From Lepidodermella squamata (taxonomy: Eukaryota; Animalia; Gastrotricha), in NCBI GenBank assembly GCA_047495785.1, contig JBLDXI010000017.1:806001-870000 (forward strand): DNA of 64,000 nt, written 5' to 3'. Every line of letters starts with the position of its first letter. The stretch's first letter is position 1. Positions 49,174-60,832 of the stretch are shown here, piece after piece. Below the pieces are notes generated by a model. The model did not search any database. It saw only the letters and a list, made by a program, of their open reading frames with translations, and was not told the origin of the DNA. A program made the translations under genes and the position numbers.

Positions 49174-50721
49174 ATGATCGCCAAGGTTGTTATAACTTTA
49201 TTGGCACTAGGGAGCCATGCTGTCAGCCAAACAGGTTTGATCGCGATTTGTCTCTTTTTCCTATTATACTCTGAAAATGTTTGGTATTGAAAGTTGACAA
49301 TGGCTCGAAAGAATATCCAACAAGTAACTTTTCACAGCAAAATTTGAAGTATATAGTTCGCGTGGTCGTATCATAGGTGATAAGGATTGGGAGCTGTACA
49401 GGTCGCCCGATTCAAGCAACCAGTACTGGTATGAAAACATCGGCGAAACTGGTCTGCGTCTCTCGCTAAAGCAAATGAGATCTCGAGGAGCCATCTGGTC
49501 AAAAATGGTATCAGTTCAACTAGCTCTTTATTCCTTAAATTGCTTCATATCAATCACATCTTGACAGCCATGGAACCTGAAATACTTTCGTGTTGAACTC
49601 TCCTATATGATATGGGGTCATCGAGGGGGCAACGGTCTTGGAGTATTTTTCGCAACCAAAGACTCTATCGCAGACGCATCGAGTATCGCAGCTTCTAGTA
49701 AGTTTTTGACGATTTATGAAGTGTACCTATTAACGTAAAAATTGCCTCGAAGATCGCTTCTCATTGAACAGCTTATTCACTGGTTTCGGGATAGTCCTGG
49801 ACACTTACGACGAAACCAAGGCCAGGGTGTGTTTTGTAGCCTATTGCTGGATTGGAAAATTCTTCTTTCTTCTTAGAGCTACGATTACATGCAGCTCGTC
49901 GTAGGTAACAACACCAGTCTTGATGACGACAATAACCAGAAGGCATCAAAAATTGTGGAATGCGACTTGGGTGAAGCAGCTATTCGAGGCGATGTGAAAA
50001 CCGTGGTCGTCCAAGTCACCAAATACATCAGCGTATGACAGAAATGAAAGGACTATCTCATCCAATTTCTGCTTCTCAAAATTTCAGGCTGGGTTGATTG
50101 TTGAAACTACCGCAGCGAATGGCACCAAAGTCAGTAACATGGTTGTTTGCGTGAAGAACATTCTTCGGCCCGCCTTTCCGGAAACTACGCAACTCTACGC
50201 TGGTTTCACAGCTTCCTCTCCTAGCAAGATTGGAGACAATGCGGATATTTACAATGTTAAAATTTTCAAGCTAACACCGAAGCTGAATGAAAATGGCGAT
50301 GAGATTAAGGGCGAGATTGAGACTTCAAAGCCGGTTGTGATCGTCGATGCTTTACCTCCGCGTAAAATTGTTGGCGAGGAAGATGCAAAACCAACTGCGG
50401 ATCAGTTGAAAGGCAACCCTGCCTCGCCCACAACTACGCGTAATTTTTGAAATTCAACTTTGGCTATGTACTTCACAGTATTTTTTGAAATCAGCTGTTC
50501 CCGGGAACTGCACGGGTAACCTTGAAACCAATTGGGTCGATCATTCGCGTTGTCAGTGCAGCTGTCACCACCCACGCATAGAAGGTACCGATGGCGAAAT
50601 CTATGACACTGGTGACGAGCCAGATGGAACTTTCCCGATTCCTCTTACCGGAGAGACGACTCGCACCTGTGCCTTGGACCAGGATGCGTTCTACTTCGCA
50701 TCTTGCCGCTGCTGGTGTTAA
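49174..50721 (+). CDS. Secreted L-type (ERGIC-53/VIP36-like) lectin domain plus C-terminal Cys-rich module
   Basis: Signal peptide MIAKVVITLLALGSHAVS; motifs SRGAIWSK, FRVELSYMI, GGNGLGVFF, FTGFGIVLDTYD, LYAGFTASS. Last exon (from ~50495) encodes an 8-Cys module; no TM segment or KKxx tail. Confidence 0.72.
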
Positions 50722-51258
50722 GAGCTGTGCCATTGGAACGCCGTGTAAATAAGCTTTAATTCTAAGCTTTTAGATGAGTGCTGGTGGTGGGCTTGAGGCT
50801 CTTGCAACTTCCTTATTTACCTAACTCTTTCAGAGCAATCCTTATTAATAAAACTATTTAGCTATAGAGTTTGATCAGCTGCAGGATTCTATCTCTCAAT
50901 TATCAGAGCTGCTCTCACTTCTTTTTTAATGGCTTAACATTCCTGAAAGGCGTAACTATCTGGGAATGCAGAATGATTCATTATTCAAACACCCTTCGTA
51001 GAAGTCATATCAAGTCATCGCCACGCTTTTTATTTGATAAATCAATCAAACGGCACAACACCAAAAATAAGTTGAATCCAGCGATTAATGATTTGCTAAA
51101 ATCTTTGATTTGCATTTGGCACTGATACAATCACATAGATGAAGAAAAAATAGCGTGATATTTGATGTCATGAAAATATACGTTTTGAGTACAAAAATAA
51201 TTTGCATGATAAATTTTTGTATTATGAAGAAGGCGAAATATGAAGAATTTCTATACGG

Positions 51259-54200
51259 CTACCAATGCGCTTCGAAGAGGCGCGCAATTTTTTGCAGAAA
51301 AGACGCGTGAGATGCATAGAGTTTCATATCACTGCCGATATCAGCCCATCTTACGGCTACAGCATCGTCTCCGGCAACAAGAGGCAGCTTCCCTACAGAA
51401 GTACCCGCTTCGTCGTGGTAATTAACCGCCACAGTTTCCATCCAAGCATTATCAGTATTGCGTGGGTCATCAACGTAGCCCCTAAAACAAAAAGAAATAA
51501 TTTTCAAAAAAATATATTTGCAAATAACAGTTATATTTTTGAAGCGTTTAGATTTCTAGATATTTTAAAACACAAAGTATGGAATCTATTTATGTTTTCT
51601 TTTTCCAAATAAATTTGATTTTATTGCTGGCTTAAAAATCAATCTTCAACAAGATTGAATTGGGTTTAGTGCGGATGGCTAGTAGAATCCGCCGAGTGTG
51701 CAAGCCACGTAAACTTTAACCATCTGCGAATTTTGAATTGTGTCTAAGGTATGTATCTCTACCTTTCATTTCATGGGTTTCAGAGCGCTCACGCGTAAGC
51801 CGCGCTCTTTAAATAAGAGAAAATGAGTCATTTCATGAATTGGGTCACCTACCTGTATAATTCACGGCCATTAGAGGGCACAAAAAATTGATCGACCAGT
51901 TTTCGAATATTCTGTTTCGCCTTTTCGTCCATGTGGCCAAGCGATGCTAGTGCCTCTTCGATAAACTCCCGCTTCAGCGTAGTTCCAATCTGTTCACCCG
52001 CATCCACCATGCCACCCGGGATCGCCCACTCACCCGTGTCCCTCCTTCGAATGGCCACGAATTGAAGTATCGGCTTGCCAGATTTCGGATGCATTTGAAC
52101 GATATTTCGATCATTCCGCTTCCAGCGAGTGACGATCGGATCGCCGGCGTGGTTAGGCCCCCACCGGCCTAATCTGCCGCGACCTCGCAGCCCTGTACGG
52201 CCCATTGGGTTCAACGGGACGCCGCCCTGGTGCTCCCGCGAGTCGGTCAACTTGTACTCACCCATATGGCTCTGGCGATTAATACGACCGTCGTTGAAAT
52301 TGAATTTGAGCTTATAATTTTTATCCACCCTAATATCTGGATCAACCCAGTTACCCATCATTTCCGGATCCGTCCAATCGACAGGGTTATACTCGCGAAA
52401 TTCAACATTCCACGGAACTTTATCATCCGGAACAGGGTAGCGGGTGATTTCTTTATTTTTATAAATTGCGTAGACTCGGTTTCGAGATTTCGAGTGGATA
52501 AAGGGCGGCACCCCAGTCGACGAGCCGGACATAGGCCGGCCACCGTCTCGCGAGTTATTGGAGGACGACATGCCGTAGTGTTCCTCTAAATCGTCCGATT
52601 CGCCATCATCCGAGTACAAAACCGCTTTTCTCGAAGCGCGCTGAGACGCGCCTCGAGTCGTATGAGCCGCGTTTGGCCTCGGTGGTCTCGCGCTCGTGTT
52701 ATTCGGGTCATACGGGTCAAGCGCGTCGTAGCTCTGGCGTGACAGCGTCGATTTCGGCCGACTTCTCGCTGTTAGATCATCGCGTTGGCTATTCAGAACC
52801 AGCCCTTGAGATTCGATAGACATGTGCCTCGCATTGCTAGACCGCGGCCGTCGACGAACCGTTTGAATAATCGGCACTTGTTCGACGATTTTCACCTCGC
52901 TATCACGTCGGGTTACTTTAGAAACGTCCAATCCGGTGGTTTTGTCCTGGTTCTTGCGCCCGGGTGATTGGCCGCGTTTACGCCGCGGTGAGGCGGATTT
53001 TCGAGGGGTCACATTGCTGTCGAGAAGGTGCTTTTCGTTAGCTAAAGCTTCGGGCGACAGGTCTTGGAACATGATCACAGACGATTTTGGACGCATGGTT
53101 GTTTCGATTTTCGTTCCACTACCGTCATCATCCATTGCGAGCCATTGACCGCATTCAAATCTATAAAATTAGAACAAATAAATGAATCATTCTGAAACTT
53201 TCAATTTTATGAAAATGTAAAATTCCAGCTTAATAATTGGGAAATTAAATTCCCTATTATTTTTTGAAATTATTGAAATCCGGCAAAATGTTTTTACAAA
53301 ATTTTGAAAAATTCCTTAATTTCAAAAATCAATACCTTAATTCGTAATTAAACTAAAAAATTATGGATTTTTGAATTTATGGAATTTTCATAAATGAAAA
53401 ATAATTTTCAATTGAAAAAATAAAGACAAGTAGGTAATTACAAATTATTTTAACCTGTATTCTTCGTAGACTGGGACTCTATGAGCCGCAACTTCGATGC
53501 GTTGTTCCTTGAATTGCTCATACTCCTCAGGATCGCGGAAGCCCTTCGCGTCTTCATCATCGTCCAGCTGGCAAGCATCTATGTCGTGGTATTCATGAGC
53601 GTTAGGATTCGCTCGTTCTAAACGGGTTCGAATAACGCGCCGAAAATCGCGGGCTTCTTGAGGCGTGAAATATTTCTTGACAACAACTTTTTCCAGCAGC
53701 CAACCGGAACCGTAACCCACGTGATCATGGCCAATGCGAATTTCTCGAATCGACCCAACATTTGTAGTCTCCAGCTAAGATAGAAAAACCAAGAATTTTT
53801 TAGGCTAAATTGAACTAATTAACAACGAAGTGTCGCTATTACAAATGAGTTCGTGCATTTTTTGTGTAGGAAATTTAAATAATAATTTTTTCTAGCAATA
53901 AAATTTTTATTACCGCTTTATTTGCCTTGACAGAATTTATTTGAAATTTAACCGGGTATTTTTGAAGAAATTTTTTAAAAAATACTTACGCATATTTTGT
54001 CCTTGGTTCCTTTATCGAACCTTCCATTGTTGCCAACAGCAAACCAAATTTCATTCGACCGGCCATTCGTGCCGAAAATTTGAATAAAGATGTTAACATT
54101 CGCTCCAGCAAAACTCGACGCGCCAGTTTCGATGACAAGTTCGTAAATCGCGAGTGAATGCGTTGGTCGCGGCGATTTCCTCCGCCGCCGTGGCGTTACA

Positions 54201-57200
54201 ACAGGCTGGTTCGGGGTTTGACCCCGAGGGAATAGCTCTTTGAAAGTTTGACCATCGCCCTCGTCAACGGCTAGCCATTGATTGCATGGGAAGGTGAAAT
54301 TTTGATGGTTCTGGCTCAAATCTGTCACTTCAACCCGGTCAAGGTACCAACCAGGTGAAGCCCCGCGGTTGTCATGCTCAATCCTAATAGAAAAGAAATT
54401 AATAGATTCTCGAAATTCTCCGATTTAAATTTCATTACTTGATTTTCGCTAATTCGCCGATTTCATTGCAATCAAGCCGAAAAACATCAGTCTGGCCCTT
54501 TTCGAAAGGATCTCGATTCGAAGTTGGCGCATCGAGTGGTAACTTTCCTGAATTACCCTTCGACCCAAACAAGGTTATGTAAACTTTCGCGTCGGTTCCA
54601 GCATAATCCTTATTCCCAGTAACCACCTTAACCTCATATGCTAAAAACAAAATTCATAAAATTTTCAAAAAATTAGGATTTTAAGATTTACATTGTCTTG
54701 ACATTGGGCGGTTTGTGGCAGTTTGTGGTTGCTGTTGCTGAGATACGGGTTGCAAGTCTTTGTAAAGTTTTCTATCACCCTCATCGATAGCCAGCCATTG
54801 ATTGCAATTGAAAGTGTAAGATCTATTTTGCGTTTTGATCTCAACCTTATCCAAAAACCATCCAGCATTGTCGCCACGGTTGTCATGTTCAATTCTACAG
54901 CAGAAAATTAGGTAAAAAAATCAACAATTAATTTTTTGAAATTTCTCACCTGATTCGAGATATTTCGCCGATATCTTTACTTTCTAATCGGAAGACATCA
55001 ACCTGTCCGGTTTGAAATGGAGATTTGTAGGTAAGCGATTGCTTCAGCGGCATTTTCTCAGTCGTTCCTTTAGTGCCAACAATTGTCAGAAAAACATTAG
55101 CATCCGTTCCAGCGAAAGTTATCGTCCCTGTCGCGACCTTGACCTCGTAGGCCTGGCGCAGCGCTGAGTTGCTCTGCTGATGTGAAGGCGGTACGGCAGC
55201 GGTTGGCTGAGATGAGGGCAGGGCGGTGAGGTCGCGGTAGATTTTACCATCGCCTTCATCCGTTGCCAGCCATTGATTGCATGGGAAAGTCCAGGTGCGA
55301 TTTGAGCCTATCTCTTTCATTTCAACTCGATCCAAAAACCAACCAGGGGCCGTTCCGCGATTGTCATGCTCGATCCTAATATAGGGTATAAAAATTCCAT
55401 TTGAAGATATACAAAATTTTGAAATCAATTAATTGTTGGCAAATTTATTTTCAAATTTCATTTAAATTGGAAATTTTATTTTAGTTATCTCTCAACTTTA
55501 AAGAACTATAAAAAAATTTTTAAATTAATATACCAACCTTATTCGATTTAGGTCACCAATATCGTTGCAATCCACCTTAAAGACATCAGTTTGGCCGCTT
55601 TCAAACGGCTCTTTGTTAGTCAAGGAGCGAATGAGTGGAATCTTTTGGGTAGTCGCTTTACTGCCGGCCAGGGTGAGGAAAACAGAGGCGTCAGTTCCAG
55701 CGCCTGTGGCCTTCCCGGTGATCACCTTGACCTCAAAAGCTACAAATAAATCGACAATAATTTCAATTATGTTTAATTGAATATATAAATTACATTTTGG
55801 ACCACTTGGAGGTGCCTGGCGACCTTGAGCTGGCTGAGGCGCTTGTTGAATTGGATTCAGGTCCTTGTAAAGCTTCCGATCACCCTCATCAGCAGCGATC
55901 CATTGATTGCATGGGAAAGCCCAGGTTCGATTTCTGCCCGTATCCTTCACCTCGACTTTTTCGAGAAACCAGCCGGGAGATGCTCCCCGGTTGTCGTGTT
56001 CAATCCTTATTCGGGTCAGCTCTCCAACATCATCCGCATTTATGTTGAAAACATCGGTTTGCCCGGTTTCAAATGGGTTTCGAGTGCTCAAACTTTGCCG
56101 AAGTTGCTGCTTATCAGACGTTCCATCAACCCCGAAAAGGGTCACAAAAACGTTAGCATCAGTTCCAGCCATGTTGAGTTTCCCAGTTGTAACCCTTACT
56201 TCATAGGCTATAACAAAAACGTTTTCAGAAAAATTCTATCAATATATTTCAAATTACATTGCATGCTTTTTCGAGGTAGGGCGTGTAAGTCTTTGTAGAG
56301 CTGTTTATCGCCCTCGTCAACTGCGATCCATTGATTGCACGGGAACTGCCAAATTTTACTCGAACCCGGCGAGCCGACCTCTTTAATTTCAACTTTATCC
56401 AAATACCAGCCGGGAGACGCGCCGCGATTGTCATGCTCGATCCTTATTCGAGTTAGCTCCCCAACATTGTTCGTATTAACGCTGAAAACATCGACTTGGC
56501 CGGTTTTGAACGGCTTTTTGCCATTTACGGTGTTACGAAGGGCTAATTTTTCACTCGCTCCTTTGCGACCGAATAGCGTGACGAAAACATTCGCATCCGT
56601 GCCGGCAAAATTCACTTTGCCAGTCGTCACCGTTATTTCATAGCCTGAAAAATAATCCAATTTAATTTCGAAATTCTTGAATTTGAGTTCAGGTAAAAGG
56701 TAAAGGAAGGCTGAAATGTACGAAAAATAAGAAAGTGGGAAGTGAAGGTACTAATTTTAGGGAGTCTGGTCTTACCAGGATGTTTATGATCTTGAATTTT
56801 ACAATCAATTTTAATAAAATCAAACTTTTATGGGGCTAGAAACTCACCTTGAGACGTTTTCTGTTCAACGGGCATGACTTGATATGTTATAATGCGACAT
56901 CCCTCAGTTATCGCCAAGGCCATTTGAACGCTGAAACTCCAAGCTCTTTGCAGCTTCAGGTCTACTACGACAATTTCATCCAGAAACCACTGTTGGCCAG
57001 ATCGACCTTCGATCTGAAATTCAAACTTGATTACGAAAATCCTGGAATTTCCTAAAATAAATCACCTGTAGAAAGCATGATTTGATTTCGCCGAGATTTT
57101 TTAATGGAAGAAAGAAAATTTCAGTTGTTTCCGAAAAGAAATGAAACGGCTTTGATGAAGGACCGCGCCGAAGATCTGCAAAATTTGCCGTGCCTTCCGA

Positions 57201-58012
57201 GCCGACCAGCTTAACCCTGGCTTTCATACTCGTTCCAACTCGACCTGTTTTCACCATAACTTTATACCGACCACCGTAATGCGGCTGTGGTTGAGGCGGC
57301 TCGGCTGTAGCTGGGCGGTGGGTTCGGCCGTGGACAGATGCGTTGTGACGGGACCATCGGTTGTAAACACTTCGAGCCGAAGCGGCGCGTTGGGCTGCCA
57401 TGGAAATTTCTGCTGAATTTATGATTGTGCGGTGTTTGTGGCGAAAATGTTCCCAATGCTCCTCGGGGCTGTTGCAAAACGCGCAAAACGTGCAATTCGC
57501 CCCGCCTTCGCGGCGTTCAATTTCAGCCGGGTCGGTTTCAAGCTCGGCAACAGATGTTGTACGAACTAGGTCAGCTGCTGATCGATGAGCTCCTTGAAAG
57601 CACGCTTGAGCGCTCCAGTCTTCACCGCCATCATTTCTCGCCAAAGTTTTGAAAACTATTATTACAAAAAATTAATAAAATCACTGAATAAGGAACAAAA
57701 TTTACTTTTCGGAACTTTGGTCAATGATTTATACGACTCCCACACCGGAGGACCATATGCGTAGAGCCCACCGTCGACAGCCCCGGTTCCACTGCCAGCT
57801 TCAGCCAGTTCGTTTTGAAGGCATCGCAACTTGAGCTCGGAGGATCTTGCGATGGCAGTTAATTTTCCGCTCAAACTTTCCTCGTTTGGAGTGTTATGTG
57901 ACCTGCCATCGCCAGACCATCGATCTTCGACCATAAAACTGCCCTTCGGTGCCGCGTTATAACGGCGAGCCTCGAGAAGGGTCAACCAGGCTGAATCTAA
58001 GGCCCCAGACAT
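51259..58012 (-). CDS. Seven PLAT/LH2 domains (LOXHD1-like) fused to a C-terminal NUDT9-type ADP-ribose pyrophosphatase (~13 exons)
   Basis: Repeated YEVxVx[11 protein letters not shown]..PFExGQxDVF..[14 protein letters not shown]..[13 protein letters not shown]. The junction TAC AG|GTTAAA..TATAG|A TTT GAA TGC completes PLAT7 in the same exon as the NUDT9 domain ([35 protein letters not shown]; last exon [16 protein letters not shown]). Confidence 0.88.
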
Positions 58013-58176
58013 CTTACAAAAGTAACTGCCTAAAATAGTGAAAGTAACTCAATATAATGAAGCGACAACAAATTTATTTCAACAACACATAGACAATAGT
58101 GAAACTTGTAAATAATTGCGAATAATACATTGTAATTGAGCGTTAAAGCCTGAGATAACGGCACCTGGAAAGATGC

Positions 58177-60285
58177 TCAAGTGCGTAAATAACGCGATTG
58201 ATCGCTTGGAAGGCCAATTTTTTGCTTCCAAGTTTTCAAGCACCAAGCTTCCATATTTCGATTTCGTTGGCAAAAAGCGCCGCAGGTTTTGTGAATTGAA
58301 AATTTTACAAGAGCTTTTGCAGGTGTGTATGAAGTTGAACAAGCAACGTTGATAAATTCATTTTCAGTTGTGCTATTACCGCGACTACGGCCAGCAAACA
58401 GGTCGAATAGGACTAGAATATCATCCATTATGAGATACTTGTTTTTGTCCATGTCGGCAGGCAAATCCCATCGAACTTTATCGTCGAACTCACAAGGTGG
58501 ATTACAGACCAATCGAACGGTGCTACCTTGGCTAGCGTTTATCATCACACTTTCGAATTGGGCTTTCTGACACGGTTTTTCTGTCGTTTTATCAGTAGAT
58601 TCTCGCTTAATAACACAGCTACGGCTTTCATAATCCCATGAGCAATCTCGATCCTTCAAGCAATAACGGATGCGCAAGTAACTTGAGCAAATGCTTTCCG
58701 GGCGAAAAGCATAGACCATGGAATCCGTCGAAAAGAACAAGTTTCCTGAACTTTGGTGCCAGGCTAGCATATTTAACTTTTCGTTGTTCACCACAGATAA
58801 GGACGCAGCTGGGTTAAAAGCCCATGACTTAGAATTTTCCTGGTAAACACGACCTTTAATCAAATTTCCTTCTGCTGTGCCAATGAAACCAGTAACAGCA
58901 CCATTCGCTTTGCTTTGGGCCAATTCCAGATGGGTGAAAGTTCCTTCAGCTTCGAAAATAGTTGTGGCTACTTGGGTACGCTGGGTGCTATTAAGCTCGG
59001 AGTCGCAGTCGATGATACTACCGGTAGGCCGTTTCCCCTTGGTAGAAGTTTCGCACTTCGAGAAGAAGTTTGACAGCTTCAGTAAGCTAAATGTACACAA
59101 AGCTGATCGAGCACCCCAAAGACCGGGCGGCGTGGAAAACAAAGCAAGGACCGTGTCATTGACCAACTTGACATCGCGTATCCAATTATATTGGAAGCTG
59201 GATGAAAAGCAGAATCCGTGACGCGGGCACTCGGTAACGCGACTTGACGACGTACAAATGAAGGAGGCCGAGAGAATGTTCCTGAATGTTTTCTCAAAAG
59301 GTACTTCAGACTCGGTAGGAGCATATGTAGTATCAGCGATATCGACTAGAAGCAACCTGGAATTTTCCTCCTGTCTGAGAAATCCAATAACTGCGCTAGC
59401 TGATAGGATGCCGGGGATAGAGTAGTGTTCAAAAGCTACAAATTCACCAACTCCCGATAAAACAGATGCGGGGCCTTGTAGAAGAGTGGAAGTCAGCTTA
59501 CTATGTAAAGCCCCTTTCTTGCCATCTTTATCAACTCCATCGTCATATGGCATCAGCTCCACTTCTGAGAACATTTTAACCTGAAGGCCAATTTTACGCA
59601 ACCAAAGGCCTGTAACCCAGACGCTAGATTTCTCACCAGCGACGGCAGATTTACTCTGCAAAAAAGCAAAAGATTGTTCGGGAAACTCCGGGCACAGCAT
59701 TCTGCTCTTATAGTACAGCTCGTGTGGTGTTGCAAAAGGGTCATCATCCATCATTGCAGATGATGCTTCCATGTTGATTTGCCGCATATTGCTCATAGAT
59801 AGTCCATTAATAACATAAATTGGCGAGCCCTTATTCCCCCCTGTAGTTGCGCAAAGCAGAAGGTCGTTTTGAGTGGAGTACACATTACTCTTGAAATTAT
59901 CATTGAGTCCAATAGATGAAAGCGGGACGATTAAACGAACATGCGATCCGCAATAAATTTTACGTTGGTCATCTTGCTGGCATAAGAAAAGTGGATCGTC
60001 ATCAAGAGTAAACGGAAGTTTCTCGGACCGCTTGAAATAGTTTAACGACCCTTTTGAGGAATTGCGCGTAATGGCAGCTGAGTAAAGGTAATCCATAGCC
60101 CCGACAAAGAAAGTTTGGCCATCGACTCCAAACTGAATCGTGCTGAAATATCTTTTCGTACCATCGTAGTCTGTGAACTTCAGTAGAGAATCGATCGAGT
60201 TCACGGCAAAGTCAGGAACATTGCAATCGATTCGAAATACGAAAAGCAGATGCAGGAAAAGGGTTATTGAATGAGTTAAAATCAT
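58177..60285 (-). CDS. Divergent secreted semaphorin (Sema-PSI-Ig, class 2-like), intronless CDS
   Basis: Signal peptide MILTHSITLFLHLLFVFRIDC; Sema motifs FFVGAMDYLY, CPEFPE, ALFSTP..SALC, FIGTAEG; PSI C..DRDCSWD..C; Ig-like STVRLVC..W; WC..WK tail as in Sema2; no TM. Confidence 0.8.
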   Translation of the reverse strand: MILTHSITLFLHLLFVFRIDCNVPDFAVNSIDSLLKFTDYDGTKRYFSTIQFGVDGQTFFVGAMDYLYSAAITRNSSKGSLNYFKRSEKLPFTLDDDPLFLCQQDDQRKIYCGSHVRLIVPLSSIGLNDNFKSNVYSTQNDLLLCATTGGNKGSPIYVINGLSMSNMRQINMEASSAMMDDDPFATPHELYYKSRMLCPEFPEQSFAFLQSKSAVAGEKSSVWVTGLWLRKIGLQVKMFSEVELMPYDDGVDKDGKKGALHSKLTSTLLQGPASVLSGVGEFVAFEHYSIPGILSASAVIGFLRQEENSRLLLVDIADTTYAPTESEVPFEKTFRNILSASFICTSSSRVTECPRHGFCFSSSFQYNWIRDVKLVNDTVLALFSTPPGLWGARSALCTFSLLKLSNFFSKCETSTKGKRPTGSIIDCDSELNSTQRTQVATTIFEAEGTFTHLELAQSKANGAVTGFIGTAEGNLIKGRVYQENSKSWAFNPAASLSVVNNEKLNMLAWHQSSGNLFFSTDSMVYAFRPESICSSYLRIRYCLKDRDCSWDYESRSCVIKRESTDKTTEKPCQKAQFESVMINASQGSTVRLVCNPPCEFDDKVRWDLPADMDKNKYLIMDDILVLFDLFAGRSRGNSTTENEFINVACSTSYTPAKALVKFSIHKTCGAFCQRNRNMEAWCLKTWKQKIGLPSDQSRYLRT

Positions 60286-60832
60286 TGCGCGAAACGTATA
60301 AGGTGGTGCCACACAGACCAACAGTTTCCCACTGATTCCGCAACCGTTGACCTTTTAAAGCCGTTATGAGGTAATTAAAATTCAAATCAATAAAATCGCC
60401 GAAATCCAACGACGCCGTTGATAAGTAAAAACTAAAGTGTTCCATTTGCAGTCAAATTATTTATTCGTTTATTTTGATGATTATTAAATAAAAATTGTCA
60501 AAACGAATTAGGTTGACAATGTGGCGCTAACAAGTCTCAGCTGTCTGCCCAGAAAAATGCCACCAAAAGGGCAAAAGTTGGTATCACACTTTAGACTTTA
60601 GCCCATGTTCATCTTGACCTAGGCAAAACTGAGTTGCTTTGGCCTAAATCAACTATGATAGCCGTTTTTTGATAATTTCCAAGTCAGCAAAAGTCGTCAA
60701 AACCTCAAATTACATTGCCCACTGCCCGTCCACCGTCCGTAAAATATTCATCATTGACTTCGTAGTTGCTCGTCTCACTTGAGAAGGCTTGGTATTCATA
60801 ACGTTAGTTTTTATTCTCCAAGGTAGTTATTG

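What the first reader, a model, noticed from the sequence alone, without database searches (positions are those of the whole stretch)
51259..58012. LOXHD1-like PLAT array fused to an intact-looking NUDT9 ADP-ribose hydrolase
Seen: seven PLAT repeats splice in frame; the last strand of PLAT7 ([13 protein letters not shown]), an S/R-rich linker and most of the NUDT9 domain lie in one exon (53160-51853), so the fusion is not a join of neighbouring genes. The Nudix box reads [17 protein letters not shown]. Established: NUDT9 with REFxEE hydrolyses ADP-ribose, the TRPM2 gating ligand; PLAT domains bind membranes or partner proteins, and LOXHD1 acts in mechanosensory stereocilia. I know NUDT9 folds as stand-alone enzymes or TRPM2 tails, not with a PLAT array. 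Inference: a membrane-recruited ADPR sink shaping local ADPR/Ca2+ signalling, possibly in sensory cells.
Basis: partly seen in the sequence, partly recalled or inferred. Interest (0 to 1): 0.85.

Follow-up and report, generated by a model that had tools for sequence, protein, structure and literature searches.

The report
PLAT-repeat protein ending in NUDT9 enzyme
A small invertebrate, probably a gastrotrich, has a real, transcribed and conserved gene that joins seven PLAT (membrane- or protein-binding) modules to an intact ADP-ribose-splitting NUDT9 enzyme, a join found in no other protein or paper searched, and its function is untested.

Summary
On the minus strand, 58012-51259, thirteen GT-AG exons give one open 1713-residue frame. 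It encodes a 232-residue N-terminal region with no family match, seven PLAT domains, a Ser/Arg-rich linker and a complete NUDT9-type Nudix domain. The Nudix box is canonical (REFIEE).

The fusion is real:
- Exon 12 carries the last PLAT7 strand, the linker and most of NUDT9.
- Spliced contigs of a public run show the exon 11-12 and 12-13 junctions.
- A syntenic orthologue in an environmental contig (L001) has the same architecture with only four PLATs. There the second half of the last PLAT, the linker and NUDT9 lie in one uninterrupted exon.
- Of the 31 exonic strain differences listed, 27 are synonymous.

The NUDT9 part groups with the stand-alone enzymes, not with TRPM2 tails. None of 371 close NUDT9 relatives, 149 of them long, has a PLAT domain apart from that orthologue. 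No paper searched describes the join, and this scan had not noted it before. Other NUDT9 fusions do exist.

In the orthologue the catalytic motifs are eroded and its branch is about 40 times longer.

Most likely function (inferred): a cytosolic ADP-ribose hydrolase tethered by its PLAT array. I rate it a new variant of a known kind, of moderate interest.

The parts
51259..58012 (-). Whole coding region of the PLAT7-NUDT9 gene (13 exons, 1713 codons plus stop)
   Evidence: Spliced model is open throughout and all introns are GT..AG. The start codon and N-terminus are conserved in orthologue L001.
57706..58012 (-). Exon 1 (aa 1-102 and the first base of codon 103)
   Evidence: The intron sits at the same position and phase as in L001.
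57066..57655 (-). Exon 2 (rest of the N-terminal region and first half of PLAT1)
   Evidence: The exon 2-3 junction appears as a loose end, ACCTTCGAT, at 57066 in run X1.
56848..57013 (-). Exon 3 (second half of PLAT1)
56258..56644 (-). Exon 4 (PLAT2)
   Evidence: Pfam PLAT E=9e-24.
55794..56207 (-). Exon 5 (PLAT3)
   Evidence: Pfam PLAT E=4e-28. It matches lipoxygenase and polycystin-1 PLAT domains in the PDB.
55538..55739 (-). Exon 6 (first part of PLAT4)
54950..55375 (-). Exon 7 (end of PLAT4, start of PLAT5)
   Evidence: Pfam PLAT E=3e-18, two stretches. The exon 7-8 joint 54950/54894 is seen in X1.
54692..54894 (-). Exon 8 (end of PLAT5)
54439..54640 (-). Exon 9 (start of PLAT6)
53990..54383 (-). 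Exon 10 (end of PLAT6, first half of PLAT7)
   Evidence: Pfam PLAT E=5e-14, two stretches. The following intron is at the same position as in L001.
53455..53774 (-). Exon 11 (second half of PLAT7 with its 72-residue charged insert)
   Evidence: It is 62% identical to L001.
51853..53160 (-). Exon 12: last PLAT7 strand, Ser/Arg-rich linker and most of NUDT9, all in one exon
   Evidence: The exon 11-12 junction is seen as the loose end TGACCGCATTCAAAT at 53455, which equals + strand 53146-53160. Pfam NUDIX E=2.5e-6; 1q33 E=1e-57.
51259..51481 (-). Exon 13 (C-terminal 74 residues of NUDT9 plus stop)
   Evidence: The joint 51852/51480 with CT..AC ends is seen in X1. The [15 protein letters not shown] motif is conserved.
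57267..58012 (-). N-terminal region, aa 1-232, no family match
   Evidence: No Pfam hit above threshold and no Atlas hit. It is 62% identical to L001. The AF2 model has low confidence.
57429..57494 (-). C2H2-zinc-finger-like motif [22 protein letters not shown] (CX2CX12HX4H spacing)
   Evidence: Read from the sequence. It is conserved in L001 (CTFCSFCETPDQHWQHFRHKHR). No Pfam support.
56849..57266 (-). PLAT1 (divergent), aa 233-354
   Evidence: The orthologous segment of L001 passes Pfam PLAT (32.4 bits, E=1.7e-7). It is 54% identical to L001. The AF2 model gives an eight-strand beta sandwich.
54239..56848 (-). PLAT2 to PLAT6, aa 355-1014, five similar repeats
   Evidence: The repeats are 54-66% identical to each other. 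Pfam.
53124..54148 (-). PLAT7, aa 1045-1216, spanning exons 10-12
   Evidence: It is 67% identical to the last PLAT of L001 and is the best-conserved part of the protein.
53457..53672 (-). 72-residue charged insert in PLAT7 (aa 1132-1203), between the strand ending ...LLEKVVVKK and the last strand
   Evidence: Comparison with PLAT2-6. Conserved in L001.
52503..53123 (-). Linker, aa 1217-1423, Ser/Arg-rich with basic clusters
   Evidence: Composition 15% S and 12% R. Strain differences in the linker are 13 synonymous to 2 nonsynonymous.
51262..52502 (-). NUDT9-type domain (cap plus Nudix core), aa 1424-1713
   Evidence: 1q33 E=1e-57. It is up to 61% identical to stand-alone NUDT9 enzymes and sits in their half of the tree. 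Motif alignment.
51948..52016 (-). Nudix motif [23 protein letters not shown]
   Evidence: Consensus taken from PMC6461439.

Best explanation
A single protein-coding gene encodes a soluble 1713-residue protein with no transmembrane segment. Its parts are a lineage-specific N-terminal region, an array of seven PLAT beta-sandwich domains, a flexible Ser/Arg-rich linker and a C-terminal NUDT9-type ADP-ribose pyrophosphatase.

Shown:
- The gene is intact and spliced as modelled at the four junctions seen, including the PLAT-to-NUDT9 one.
- It is under purifying selection.
- It is conserved with synteny in a second species.
- The NUDT9 part derives from the stand-alone enzyme lineage and keeps every catalytic motif.

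Inferred:
- The C-terminal domain hydrolyses ADP-ribose (to AMP and ribose-5-phosphate, as NUDT9 does).
- The PLAT array, as in LOXHD1, polycystin-1 and lipoxygenases, holds it at a membrane or on a partner protein. ADP-ribose would then be removed locally rather than in mitochondria or bulk cytosol.
- In the sister species the same scaffold carries a decayed Nudix site, so there the domain probably only binds a ligand or is structural.
For: - Gene model with 13 GT-AG exons and an open frame.
- PLAT and NUDIX Pfam hits.
- E=1e-57 to human NUDT9 1q33.
- Exon 12 contains a PLAT strand plus NUDT9.
- Run X1 has zero depth in intron 11 and precise intron-free joints at 51852/51480 and 54950/54894. 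It also has loose ends that spell the exon 11-12 and exon 2-3 junctions.
- Orthologue L001 has four exons and 1253 aa with three shared intron positions. The second half of its last PLAT, the linker and NUDT9 lie in one exon. Both neighbouring genes are syntenic.
- 27 synonymous against 4 nonsynonymous differences in the listed strain variants.
- Tree: window and L001 are sisters (SH-aLRT 99) in the enzyme half (85), and the window end branch is 0.026.
- Motif alignment.
- Activity rules for Nudix boxes (PMC6461439).
- PLAT domains bind lipids and proteins, and LOXHD1 is a PLAT-only scaffold (PMC8051682; PMC11387651).
- No hydrophobic 19-residue window above 1.22 on the Kyte-Doolittle scale.
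Against: - No enzyme, lipid-binding or localisation data exist.
- The junction evidence comes from short contigs of one run whose RNA nature is a guess by the tool. I infer it is RNA from the precise intron removal.
- No single molecule spanning PLAT exons to exon 13 was seen.
- A PLAT-less isoform cannot be excluded. It could arise from an internal promoter or from spliced-leader addition at the exon 12 acceptor.
- L001's eroded active site shows the architecture can persist without an intact catalytic site, so hydrolysis may not be the family's core function.
- Whether the genome also has a stand-alone NUDT9 or a TRPM2 channel is unknown.
Confidence: 0.6

Rival explanations
1. The NUDT9 domain works mainly as a ligand sensor, as in vertebrate TRPM2. 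Binding of ADP-ribose or a related nucleotide would change the behaviour of the PLAT scaffold, and hydrolysis would only reset the switch or be dispensable.
For: - In L001 the fold-defining motifs are kept ([28 protein letters not shown]). The catalytic ones are changed: GG to VS, the Glu of GX5E to Ser, REFIEE to QEFIED, HAGDP to HRGEL, LYASH to LAERF.
- The whole L001 gene stays open and syntenic.
- Precedent: in nvTRPM2, abolishing catalysis does not affect gating, and hsTRPM2 NUDT9-H binds ADPR without hydrolysing it (PMC6461439).
Against: - In the window species every catalytic motif matches active NUDT9 enzymes.
- Its end branch is extremely short (0.026 against 1.08 for L001), which is the signature of a retained enzyme.
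- The listed variants in the domain are nearly all synonymous.
Confidence: 0.2
2. It is simply this lineage's housekeeping NUDT9. The enzyme happened to be captured by a PLAT-repeat gene, and the PLAT array adds no specific targeting function relevant to ADP-ribose signalling.
For: - The domain sits among the ordinary NUDT9 enzymes.
- No other NUDT9 was noted in this genome by the scan (a weak negative).
- The NUDT9 domain is promiscuous: H1-, kinase-, VWA- and EF-hand fusions are in databases.
- This genome has several other PLAT fusions according to earlier notes.
Against: - The last PLAT with its insert is the best-conserved part of the protein (67%).
- The architecture has survived a divergence deep enough to leave the neighbouring gene at 38.5% identity.
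- The linker also shows mostly synonymous variation.
Confidence: 0.15
3. The fusion is an annotation artefact, or the main product is a PLAT-less NUDT9 made from a start inside or at exon 12.
For: - This animal uses spliced-leader trans-splicing (earlier notes), so the exon 12 acceptor could in principle take a leader.
- In-frame Met codons precede the NUDT9 domain (aa 1401 and 1414).
Against: - Exon 12 begins with a PLAT strand that is useless on its own.
- The exon 11-12 junction is present in X1 contigs.
- L001 has no intron, and so no acceptor, at this place.
- X1 depth is similar over PLAT and NUDT9 exons, though contig depth is a poor measure.
Confidence: 0.05

Closest known systems
NUDT9 (ADP-ribose pyrophosphatase, mitochondrial; PDB 1q33)
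   Same: - Full cap plus Nudix core.
- 50-61% identity to animal NUDT9 enzymes.
- Canonical REFxEE box and [15 protein letters not shown] motif.
- Groups with the enzymes in the tree.
   Different: - It sits at the C-terminus of a 1713-residue protein, behind seven PLAT domains.
- It has no N-terminal mitochondrial leader.
- It shares a 5-6 residue insert (DSREH / DTREN) with L001 only.
NUDT9-H domain of TRPM2 channels (nvTRPM2 6co7, srTRPM2 8sr7, hsTRPM2 6mix)
   Same: - A NUDT9 fold fused to the C-terminus of a large protein that acts at a membrane.
- Active in some lineages and catalytically decayed in others. This mirrors invertebrate versus vertebrate TRPM2 (PMC6461439).
   Different: - No SLOG/MHR, TRPM2 or ion-transport domains.
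- The domain is not in the TRPM2 half of the tree (SH-aLRT 85).
- This is an independent fusion event.
LOXHD1 (15 PLAT repeats, hair-cell stereocilia)
   Same: - A cytosolic tandem PLAT array.
- LOXHD1 proteins are the nearest named relatives of the array, at 30-39% identity.
   Different: - LOXHD1 is PLAT-only (PMC8051682).
- This protein has 7 PLATs (4 in L001), a distinct N-terminal region, an insert-bearing last PLAT and an enzyme tail.
- Orthology to LOXHD1 was not established.
Other NUDT9 fusions in sequence databases
   Same: NUDT9 joined to unrelated modules:
- linker histone H1 (PF00538) in two sea urchins (P0005, P0011);
- tyrosine kinase plus PID in Salpingoeca rosetta (P0354);
- VWA (P0310);
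- SLOG plus EF-hands in ENA contigs (P0130, P0137, P0325).
   Different: - None has a PLAT domain.
- Most are uncharacterised predictions, and some may be merged gene models.

Membership tests
NUDT9-type Nudix ADP-ribose pyrophosphatase | Nudix motif GX5EX7REUXEE with the three glutamates | tested here: met
   [20 protein letters not shown] at 52016-51948. It aligns column for column with human, fish, hemichordate and fluke NUDT9. Consensus from PMC6461439.
NUDT9-type Nudix ADP-ribose pyrophosphatase | NUDT9-specific N-terminal cap domain and C-terminal [15 protein letters not shown] / GDDA / LYASH motifs | tested here: met
   The alignment to 1q33 starts at chain residue 4. All motifs are present. 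PF25969 NUDT9_N is precomputed for orthologue P0002.
NUDT9-type Nudix ADP-ribose pyrophosphatase | Groups with NUDT9 enzymes rather than other Nudix clades | tested here: met
   Quick maximum-likelihood tree of 58 domains. It falls in the enzyme half (SH-aLRT 85), and its highest identity is 61% to a fluke NUDT9. Support is moderate.
NUDT9-type Nudix ADP-ribose pyrophosphatase | Mg2+-dependent hydrolysis of ADP-ribose | not testable with these tools
   Needs an enzyme assay.
NUDT9-type Nudix ADP-ribose pyrophosphatase | Stand-alone protein of about 280-350 aa, with a mitochondrial leader in the alpha form | tested here: not met
   The domain is residues 1424-1713 of a 1713-aa protein.
TRPM2 NUDT9-H | Fused behind the TRPM channel (SLOG/MHR, TRPM2 domain, ion transport) | tested here: not met
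   No such Pfam domains in any exon. It is separated from the TRPM2 half of the tree.
LOXHD1 | Protein made only of tandem PLAT repeats (15 in mammals) | tested here: not met
   Seven PLATs plus a 232-aa N-terminal region, a linker and NUDT9.
LOXHD1 | PLAT repeats closest to those of LOXHD1 | tested here: inconclusive
   The best named hits to the L001 PLAT exon are LOXHD1 of lizard, falcon, Aplysia and a clam, and rotifer PLAT proteins, at 30-39% identity. No tree or orthology test was done, and only proteins of 195-621 aa were visible to that search.
PLAT/LH2 domain proteins | PLAT beta-sandwich domain (PF01477) | tested here: met
   Pfam E down to 4e-28. PDB sequence matches to lipoxygenase and polycystin-1 PLAT domains.

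The most novel reading that the evidence does not exclude
PLAT arrays in this lineage may act as a common scaffold for an NAD+/ADP-ribose signalling pair. It would make ADP-ribose-type signals at a membrane site, and PLAT7-NUDT9 would erase them there. In the sister species the eraser has turned into a non-hydrolysing ADP-ribose sensor. That would be an independent replay of the enzyme-to-sensor shift of TRPM2.
Probability: 0.1. Interest if true: 0.8.

Novelty: new variant of a known kind. Interest (0 to 1): 0.45.

Why it matters
NUDT9 folds are studied almost entirely as the mitochondrial enzyme and as the ligand-binding tail of TRPM2. This is a third, independent way of placing that fold, on a PLAT scaffold of the kind that holds channel complexes in place in hair cells.

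It also comes as a natural pair. One species has a fully canonical catalytic site and the other has an eroded one on the same scaffold. That pair gives a clean system for asking what is selected when an ADP-ribose hydrolase is tethered: local removal of the ligand, or ligand sensing.

The gene also adds to a set of unusual PLAT fusions in this poorly sampled animal group. The practical reach is modest until activity, binding partners and expression sites are known.

Tried and rejected
1. Scan of JGI metagenome contigs with a profile of the insert-bearing PLAT7 half. The two loci returned are bacterial carotenoid-gene contigs with a chance antisense match. Rejected.
2. HMMER search of 1.84 billion representatives with orthologue fragment P0002. 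No protein matched beyond the NUDT9 part. Neither P0002 nor the window protein seems to be represented there.
3. Word-index search restricted to long proteins, using the NUDT9-H region of a Branchiostoma TRPM2 (P0147) as bait. It returned 149 long NUDT9-bearing proteins and none had PLAT. Proteins sharing no 5-residue word with the bait would be missed.
4. I could not query with the full spliced 1713-aa protein. It has no reference, and long sequences are not to be typed. Full-length annotated orthologues elsewhere could therefore have been missed.
5. N-terminal region. Pfam gave nothing above threshold and the Atlas gave no usable hit. The AF2 model from a two-sequence alignment had mean pLDDT 49.5, too poor for a fold search, and only the PLAT1 part looked folded.
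6. Rfam and tRNA scans of 51200-58200 found nothing.
7. L004 is the same contig as L001 from what looks like the same data (99.8% identical and the same start). I do not count it as independent.
8. Earlier-findings look-up by sequence was blank.
Full report
**What is there.** I translated the minus strand of 58100-51200 and joined the open segments at GT..AG borders. This gives 13 exons: 58012-57706, 57655-57066, 57013-56848, 56644-56258, 56207-55794, 55739-55538, 55375-54950, 54894-54692, 54640-54439, 54383-53990, 53774-53455, 53160-51853 and 51481-51259. Together they form one open frame of 1713 codons.

Pfam finds PLAT (PF01477) in the repeat exons at E=5e-14 to 4e-28, and NUDIX in exon 12. 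The protein reads as follows (coordinates):
- an N-terminal region (aa 1-232) with no family match and a conserved CX2CX12HX4H motif;
- a divergent PLAT1;
- five similar PLATs, 54-66% identical to each other;
- a PLAT7 that carries a 72-residue charged insert before its last strand;
- a 207-residue Ser/Arg-rich linker;
- a complete NUDT9-type domain.

No 19-residue window is hydrophobic enough for a membrane span.

**Is the join real?** Four lines of evidence say yes.
- *Exon content.* Exon 12 begins with [13 protein letters not shown], the counterpart of [13 protein letters not shown] that closes every other PLAT repeat. It runs without a break through the linker into NUDT9. A PLAT domain would be incomplete without this exon.
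- *Transcripts.* In public run X1 the contigs have zero depth in intron 11. They skip introns 7 and 12 exactly (joints 54894/54950 and 51480/51852, ends CT..AC, which is GT..AG on the gene's strand). Contigs that stop at 53455 continue with TGACCGCATTCAAAT, which is exactly + strand 53146-53160, the start of exon 12. The exon 2-3 junction shows in the same way. The tool only guesses that X1 is RNA; precise intron removal is my reason to accept it. Run X2 covers the introns and behaves as DNA.
- *Orthologue.* The best full-coverage hit of exon 12 is P0002, from an environmental contig, fetched as L001. L001 holds a four-exon, 1253-residue orthologue with the same N-terminus, four PLATs, a linker and a NUDT9-like end. 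Its three introns are at positions shared with the window gene. There is no intron where the window has intron 11, so the second half of the last PLAT, the linker and NUDT9 are one exon. Both neighbours are syntenic: the upstream gene is 38.5% identical over 719 residues, and the downstream convergent gene is 52% identical over its Cys-rich end. L004 is the same contig from the same data and adds nothing.
- *Selection.* Of the 31 exonic differences listed between the window and runs X1/X2, 27 are synonymous and 4 are not. In the linker the count is 13 to 2. Only 40 of 68 differences were printed.

**What the NUDT9 part is.** The part of the NUDT9 region that lies in exon 12 (235 residues) matches human NUDT9 (1q33) at E=1e-57, nvTRPM2 at 3e-46 and the choanoflagellate TRPM2 chanzyme (8sr7) at 6e-34. 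A tree of 58 domains gives three results:
- The window and L001 domains are sisters (SH-aLRT 99).
- They sit in the half that holds the stand-alone enzymes rather than the TRPM2 half (85, quick search, moderate support).
- The end branches differ strongly, 0.026 for the window against 1.08 for L001.

The motif alignment explains the asymmetry.
- The window keeps [68 protein letters not shown] and LYASH.
- L001 reads HRGEL, IPVSMADAGS, ATQEFIED, DDNLNTDNAWLET and LAERF.

Published work reports that REFGEE (NUDT9), REFMEE (srTRPM2) and AEFGEE (nvTRPM2) boxes are active. It reports that RILGEE and REFGKK mutants, and RILRQE of human TRPM2, are not (PMC6461439). By that rule the window domain should hydrolyse ADP-ribose. 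The L001 domain is doubtful, and Pfam NUDIX no longer detects it.

**Is the architecture known?** I found it nowhere else.
- The 120 best word-index hits to exon 12 carry precomputed Pfam domains, and none has PLAT.
- The 150 best of 2272 HMMER hits to P0002 in 1.84 billion representatives match only the NUDT9 part.
- A search limited to proteins of 900-2863 residues, baited with a TRPM2 NUDT9-H region, gave 149 hits. Nearly all are TRPM2-like channels, and none has PLAT.
- A local PLAT profile built from the window's repeats found PLAT in none of these 371 proteins except P0002.
- A JGI metagenome scan gave only chance bacterial matches.
- Full-text searches for PLAT with NUDT9 or Nudix, and for LOXHD1 with ADP-ribose, found no paper on such a protein.
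- The scan's own notes hold no earlier NUDT9 finding in this genome.

Two limits apply. The spliced full-length protein could not be used as a query, and only the best hits of each search are listed. A distant or unannotated second occurrence cannot be excluded.

Databases hold histone H1-NUDT9, kinase-NUDT9, VWA-NUDT9 and SLOG-NUDT9-EF-hand predictions.

**The PLAT side.** The L001 PLAT exon finds LOXHD1 proteins of vertebrates and molluscs, and rotifer PLAT proteins, as nearest named relatives at 30-39% identity. In the PDB the repeats match lipoxygenase and polycystin-1 PLAT domains. 'LOXHD1-like' is a fair description, but membership fails: LOXHD1 is PLAT-only (PMC8051682).

The best-conserved part of the whole protein is the last PLAT with its insert (67%). 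The N-terminal region follows at 62%, then NUDT9 at 55% and the linker at 43%. The scaffold is thus at least as constrained as the enzyme.

**How it most likely works.** The shown steps are an expressed, selected, conserved single polypeptide with a canonical NUDT9 active site in this species. The inferred steps are these. The C-terminal domain splits ADP-ribose. The PLAT array, by analogy with PLAT domains that bind lipids and proteins and with LOXHD1 keeping TMC1 channels in place (PMC11387651), fixes it at a membrane or on a partner, so that ADP-ribose is removed locally.

I give the whole statement 0.6 and the gene-level part about 0.9. The main rival, at 0.2, is that the domain is chiefly a ligand sensor. 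L001's eroded site favours that reading, and the window's ultra-short branch and intact motifs count against it.

Links to TRPM2, Ca2+ or sensory cells remain untested. I could not reach that sequence, so this is a lead only.

**Organism.** Earlier notes suggest the gastrotrich Lepidodermella squamata (s1-421969). I did not test this.

**Verdict.** This is a new domain architecture built from known parts, restricted as far as can be seen to one small lineage. Interest is moderate.

Noticed in passing
window 51719-51810 (+ strand), inside intron 12 of the gene: Candidate spliced-leader RNA gene, antisense to the host gene.
- A 30-nt leader (51719-51748) ends ...TCTAAG and is followed by GTATGT. 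Further 3' lie a GC-rich hairpin and a T run.
- Contig depth spikes here, to 4453 as a bin mean and up to 29128 in X1.
- Contigs diverge into different sequences right after 51748-51750, as expected for a leader spliced onto many mRNAs.
- No Rfam match.
- This fits earlier notes of ~92-nt SL genes with a 30-nt leader in this genome, but I could not compare sequences (one search was blank).
   Followed up: partly
window 58013-58201: Only about 170-190 bases separate the end of the upstream gene from this gene's ATG. A pyrimidine-rich ...TATTTTAG|G acceptor-like site lies 17 bases upstream of the ATG. It may be a trans-splice acceptor.
   Followed up: no
window 58201-60312 (- strand); L001 205-2250: The upstream neighbour is a single open frame of about 700 residues. 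It has a syntenic orthologue (38.5% identity) and no Pfam family on record.
   Followed up: partly
window 50410-50718 (+ strand); L001 6976-7836 (-): The downstream convergent neighbour ends in a conserved Cys-rich tail (...RCQCSCHH...CRCWC) shared with the L001 neighbour.
   Followed up: no
proteins P0005, P0011, P0354, P0310, P0130, P0137, P0325, P0346, P0365: Other unstudied NUDT9 fusions in public predictions:
- linker-histone H1 plus NUDT9 in two sea urchins;
- tyrosine kinase/PID plus NUDT9 in Salpingoeca rosetta;
- VWA plus NUDT9;
- long SLOG plus NUDT9 plus EF-hand proteins on ENA contigs.
   Followed up: partly
protein P0398 (Rotaria sordida, 603 aa): Precomputed Pfam domains pair an ADP-ribosyltransferase exoenzyme domain (PF03496) with PLAT. 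This is another PLAT fusion with an NAD/ADP-ribose enzyme, in a rotifer.
   Followed up: no
window introns at 51488-51654, 53168-53260, 53305-53448 and 55395-55522: Run X2 (DNA, labelled as a different organism or strain code) lacks 165, 91, 142 and 126 bases inside introns. It differs from the window mainly at third codon positions in exons. It is a diverged strain or very close species with intron-length polymorphism.
   Followed up: partly
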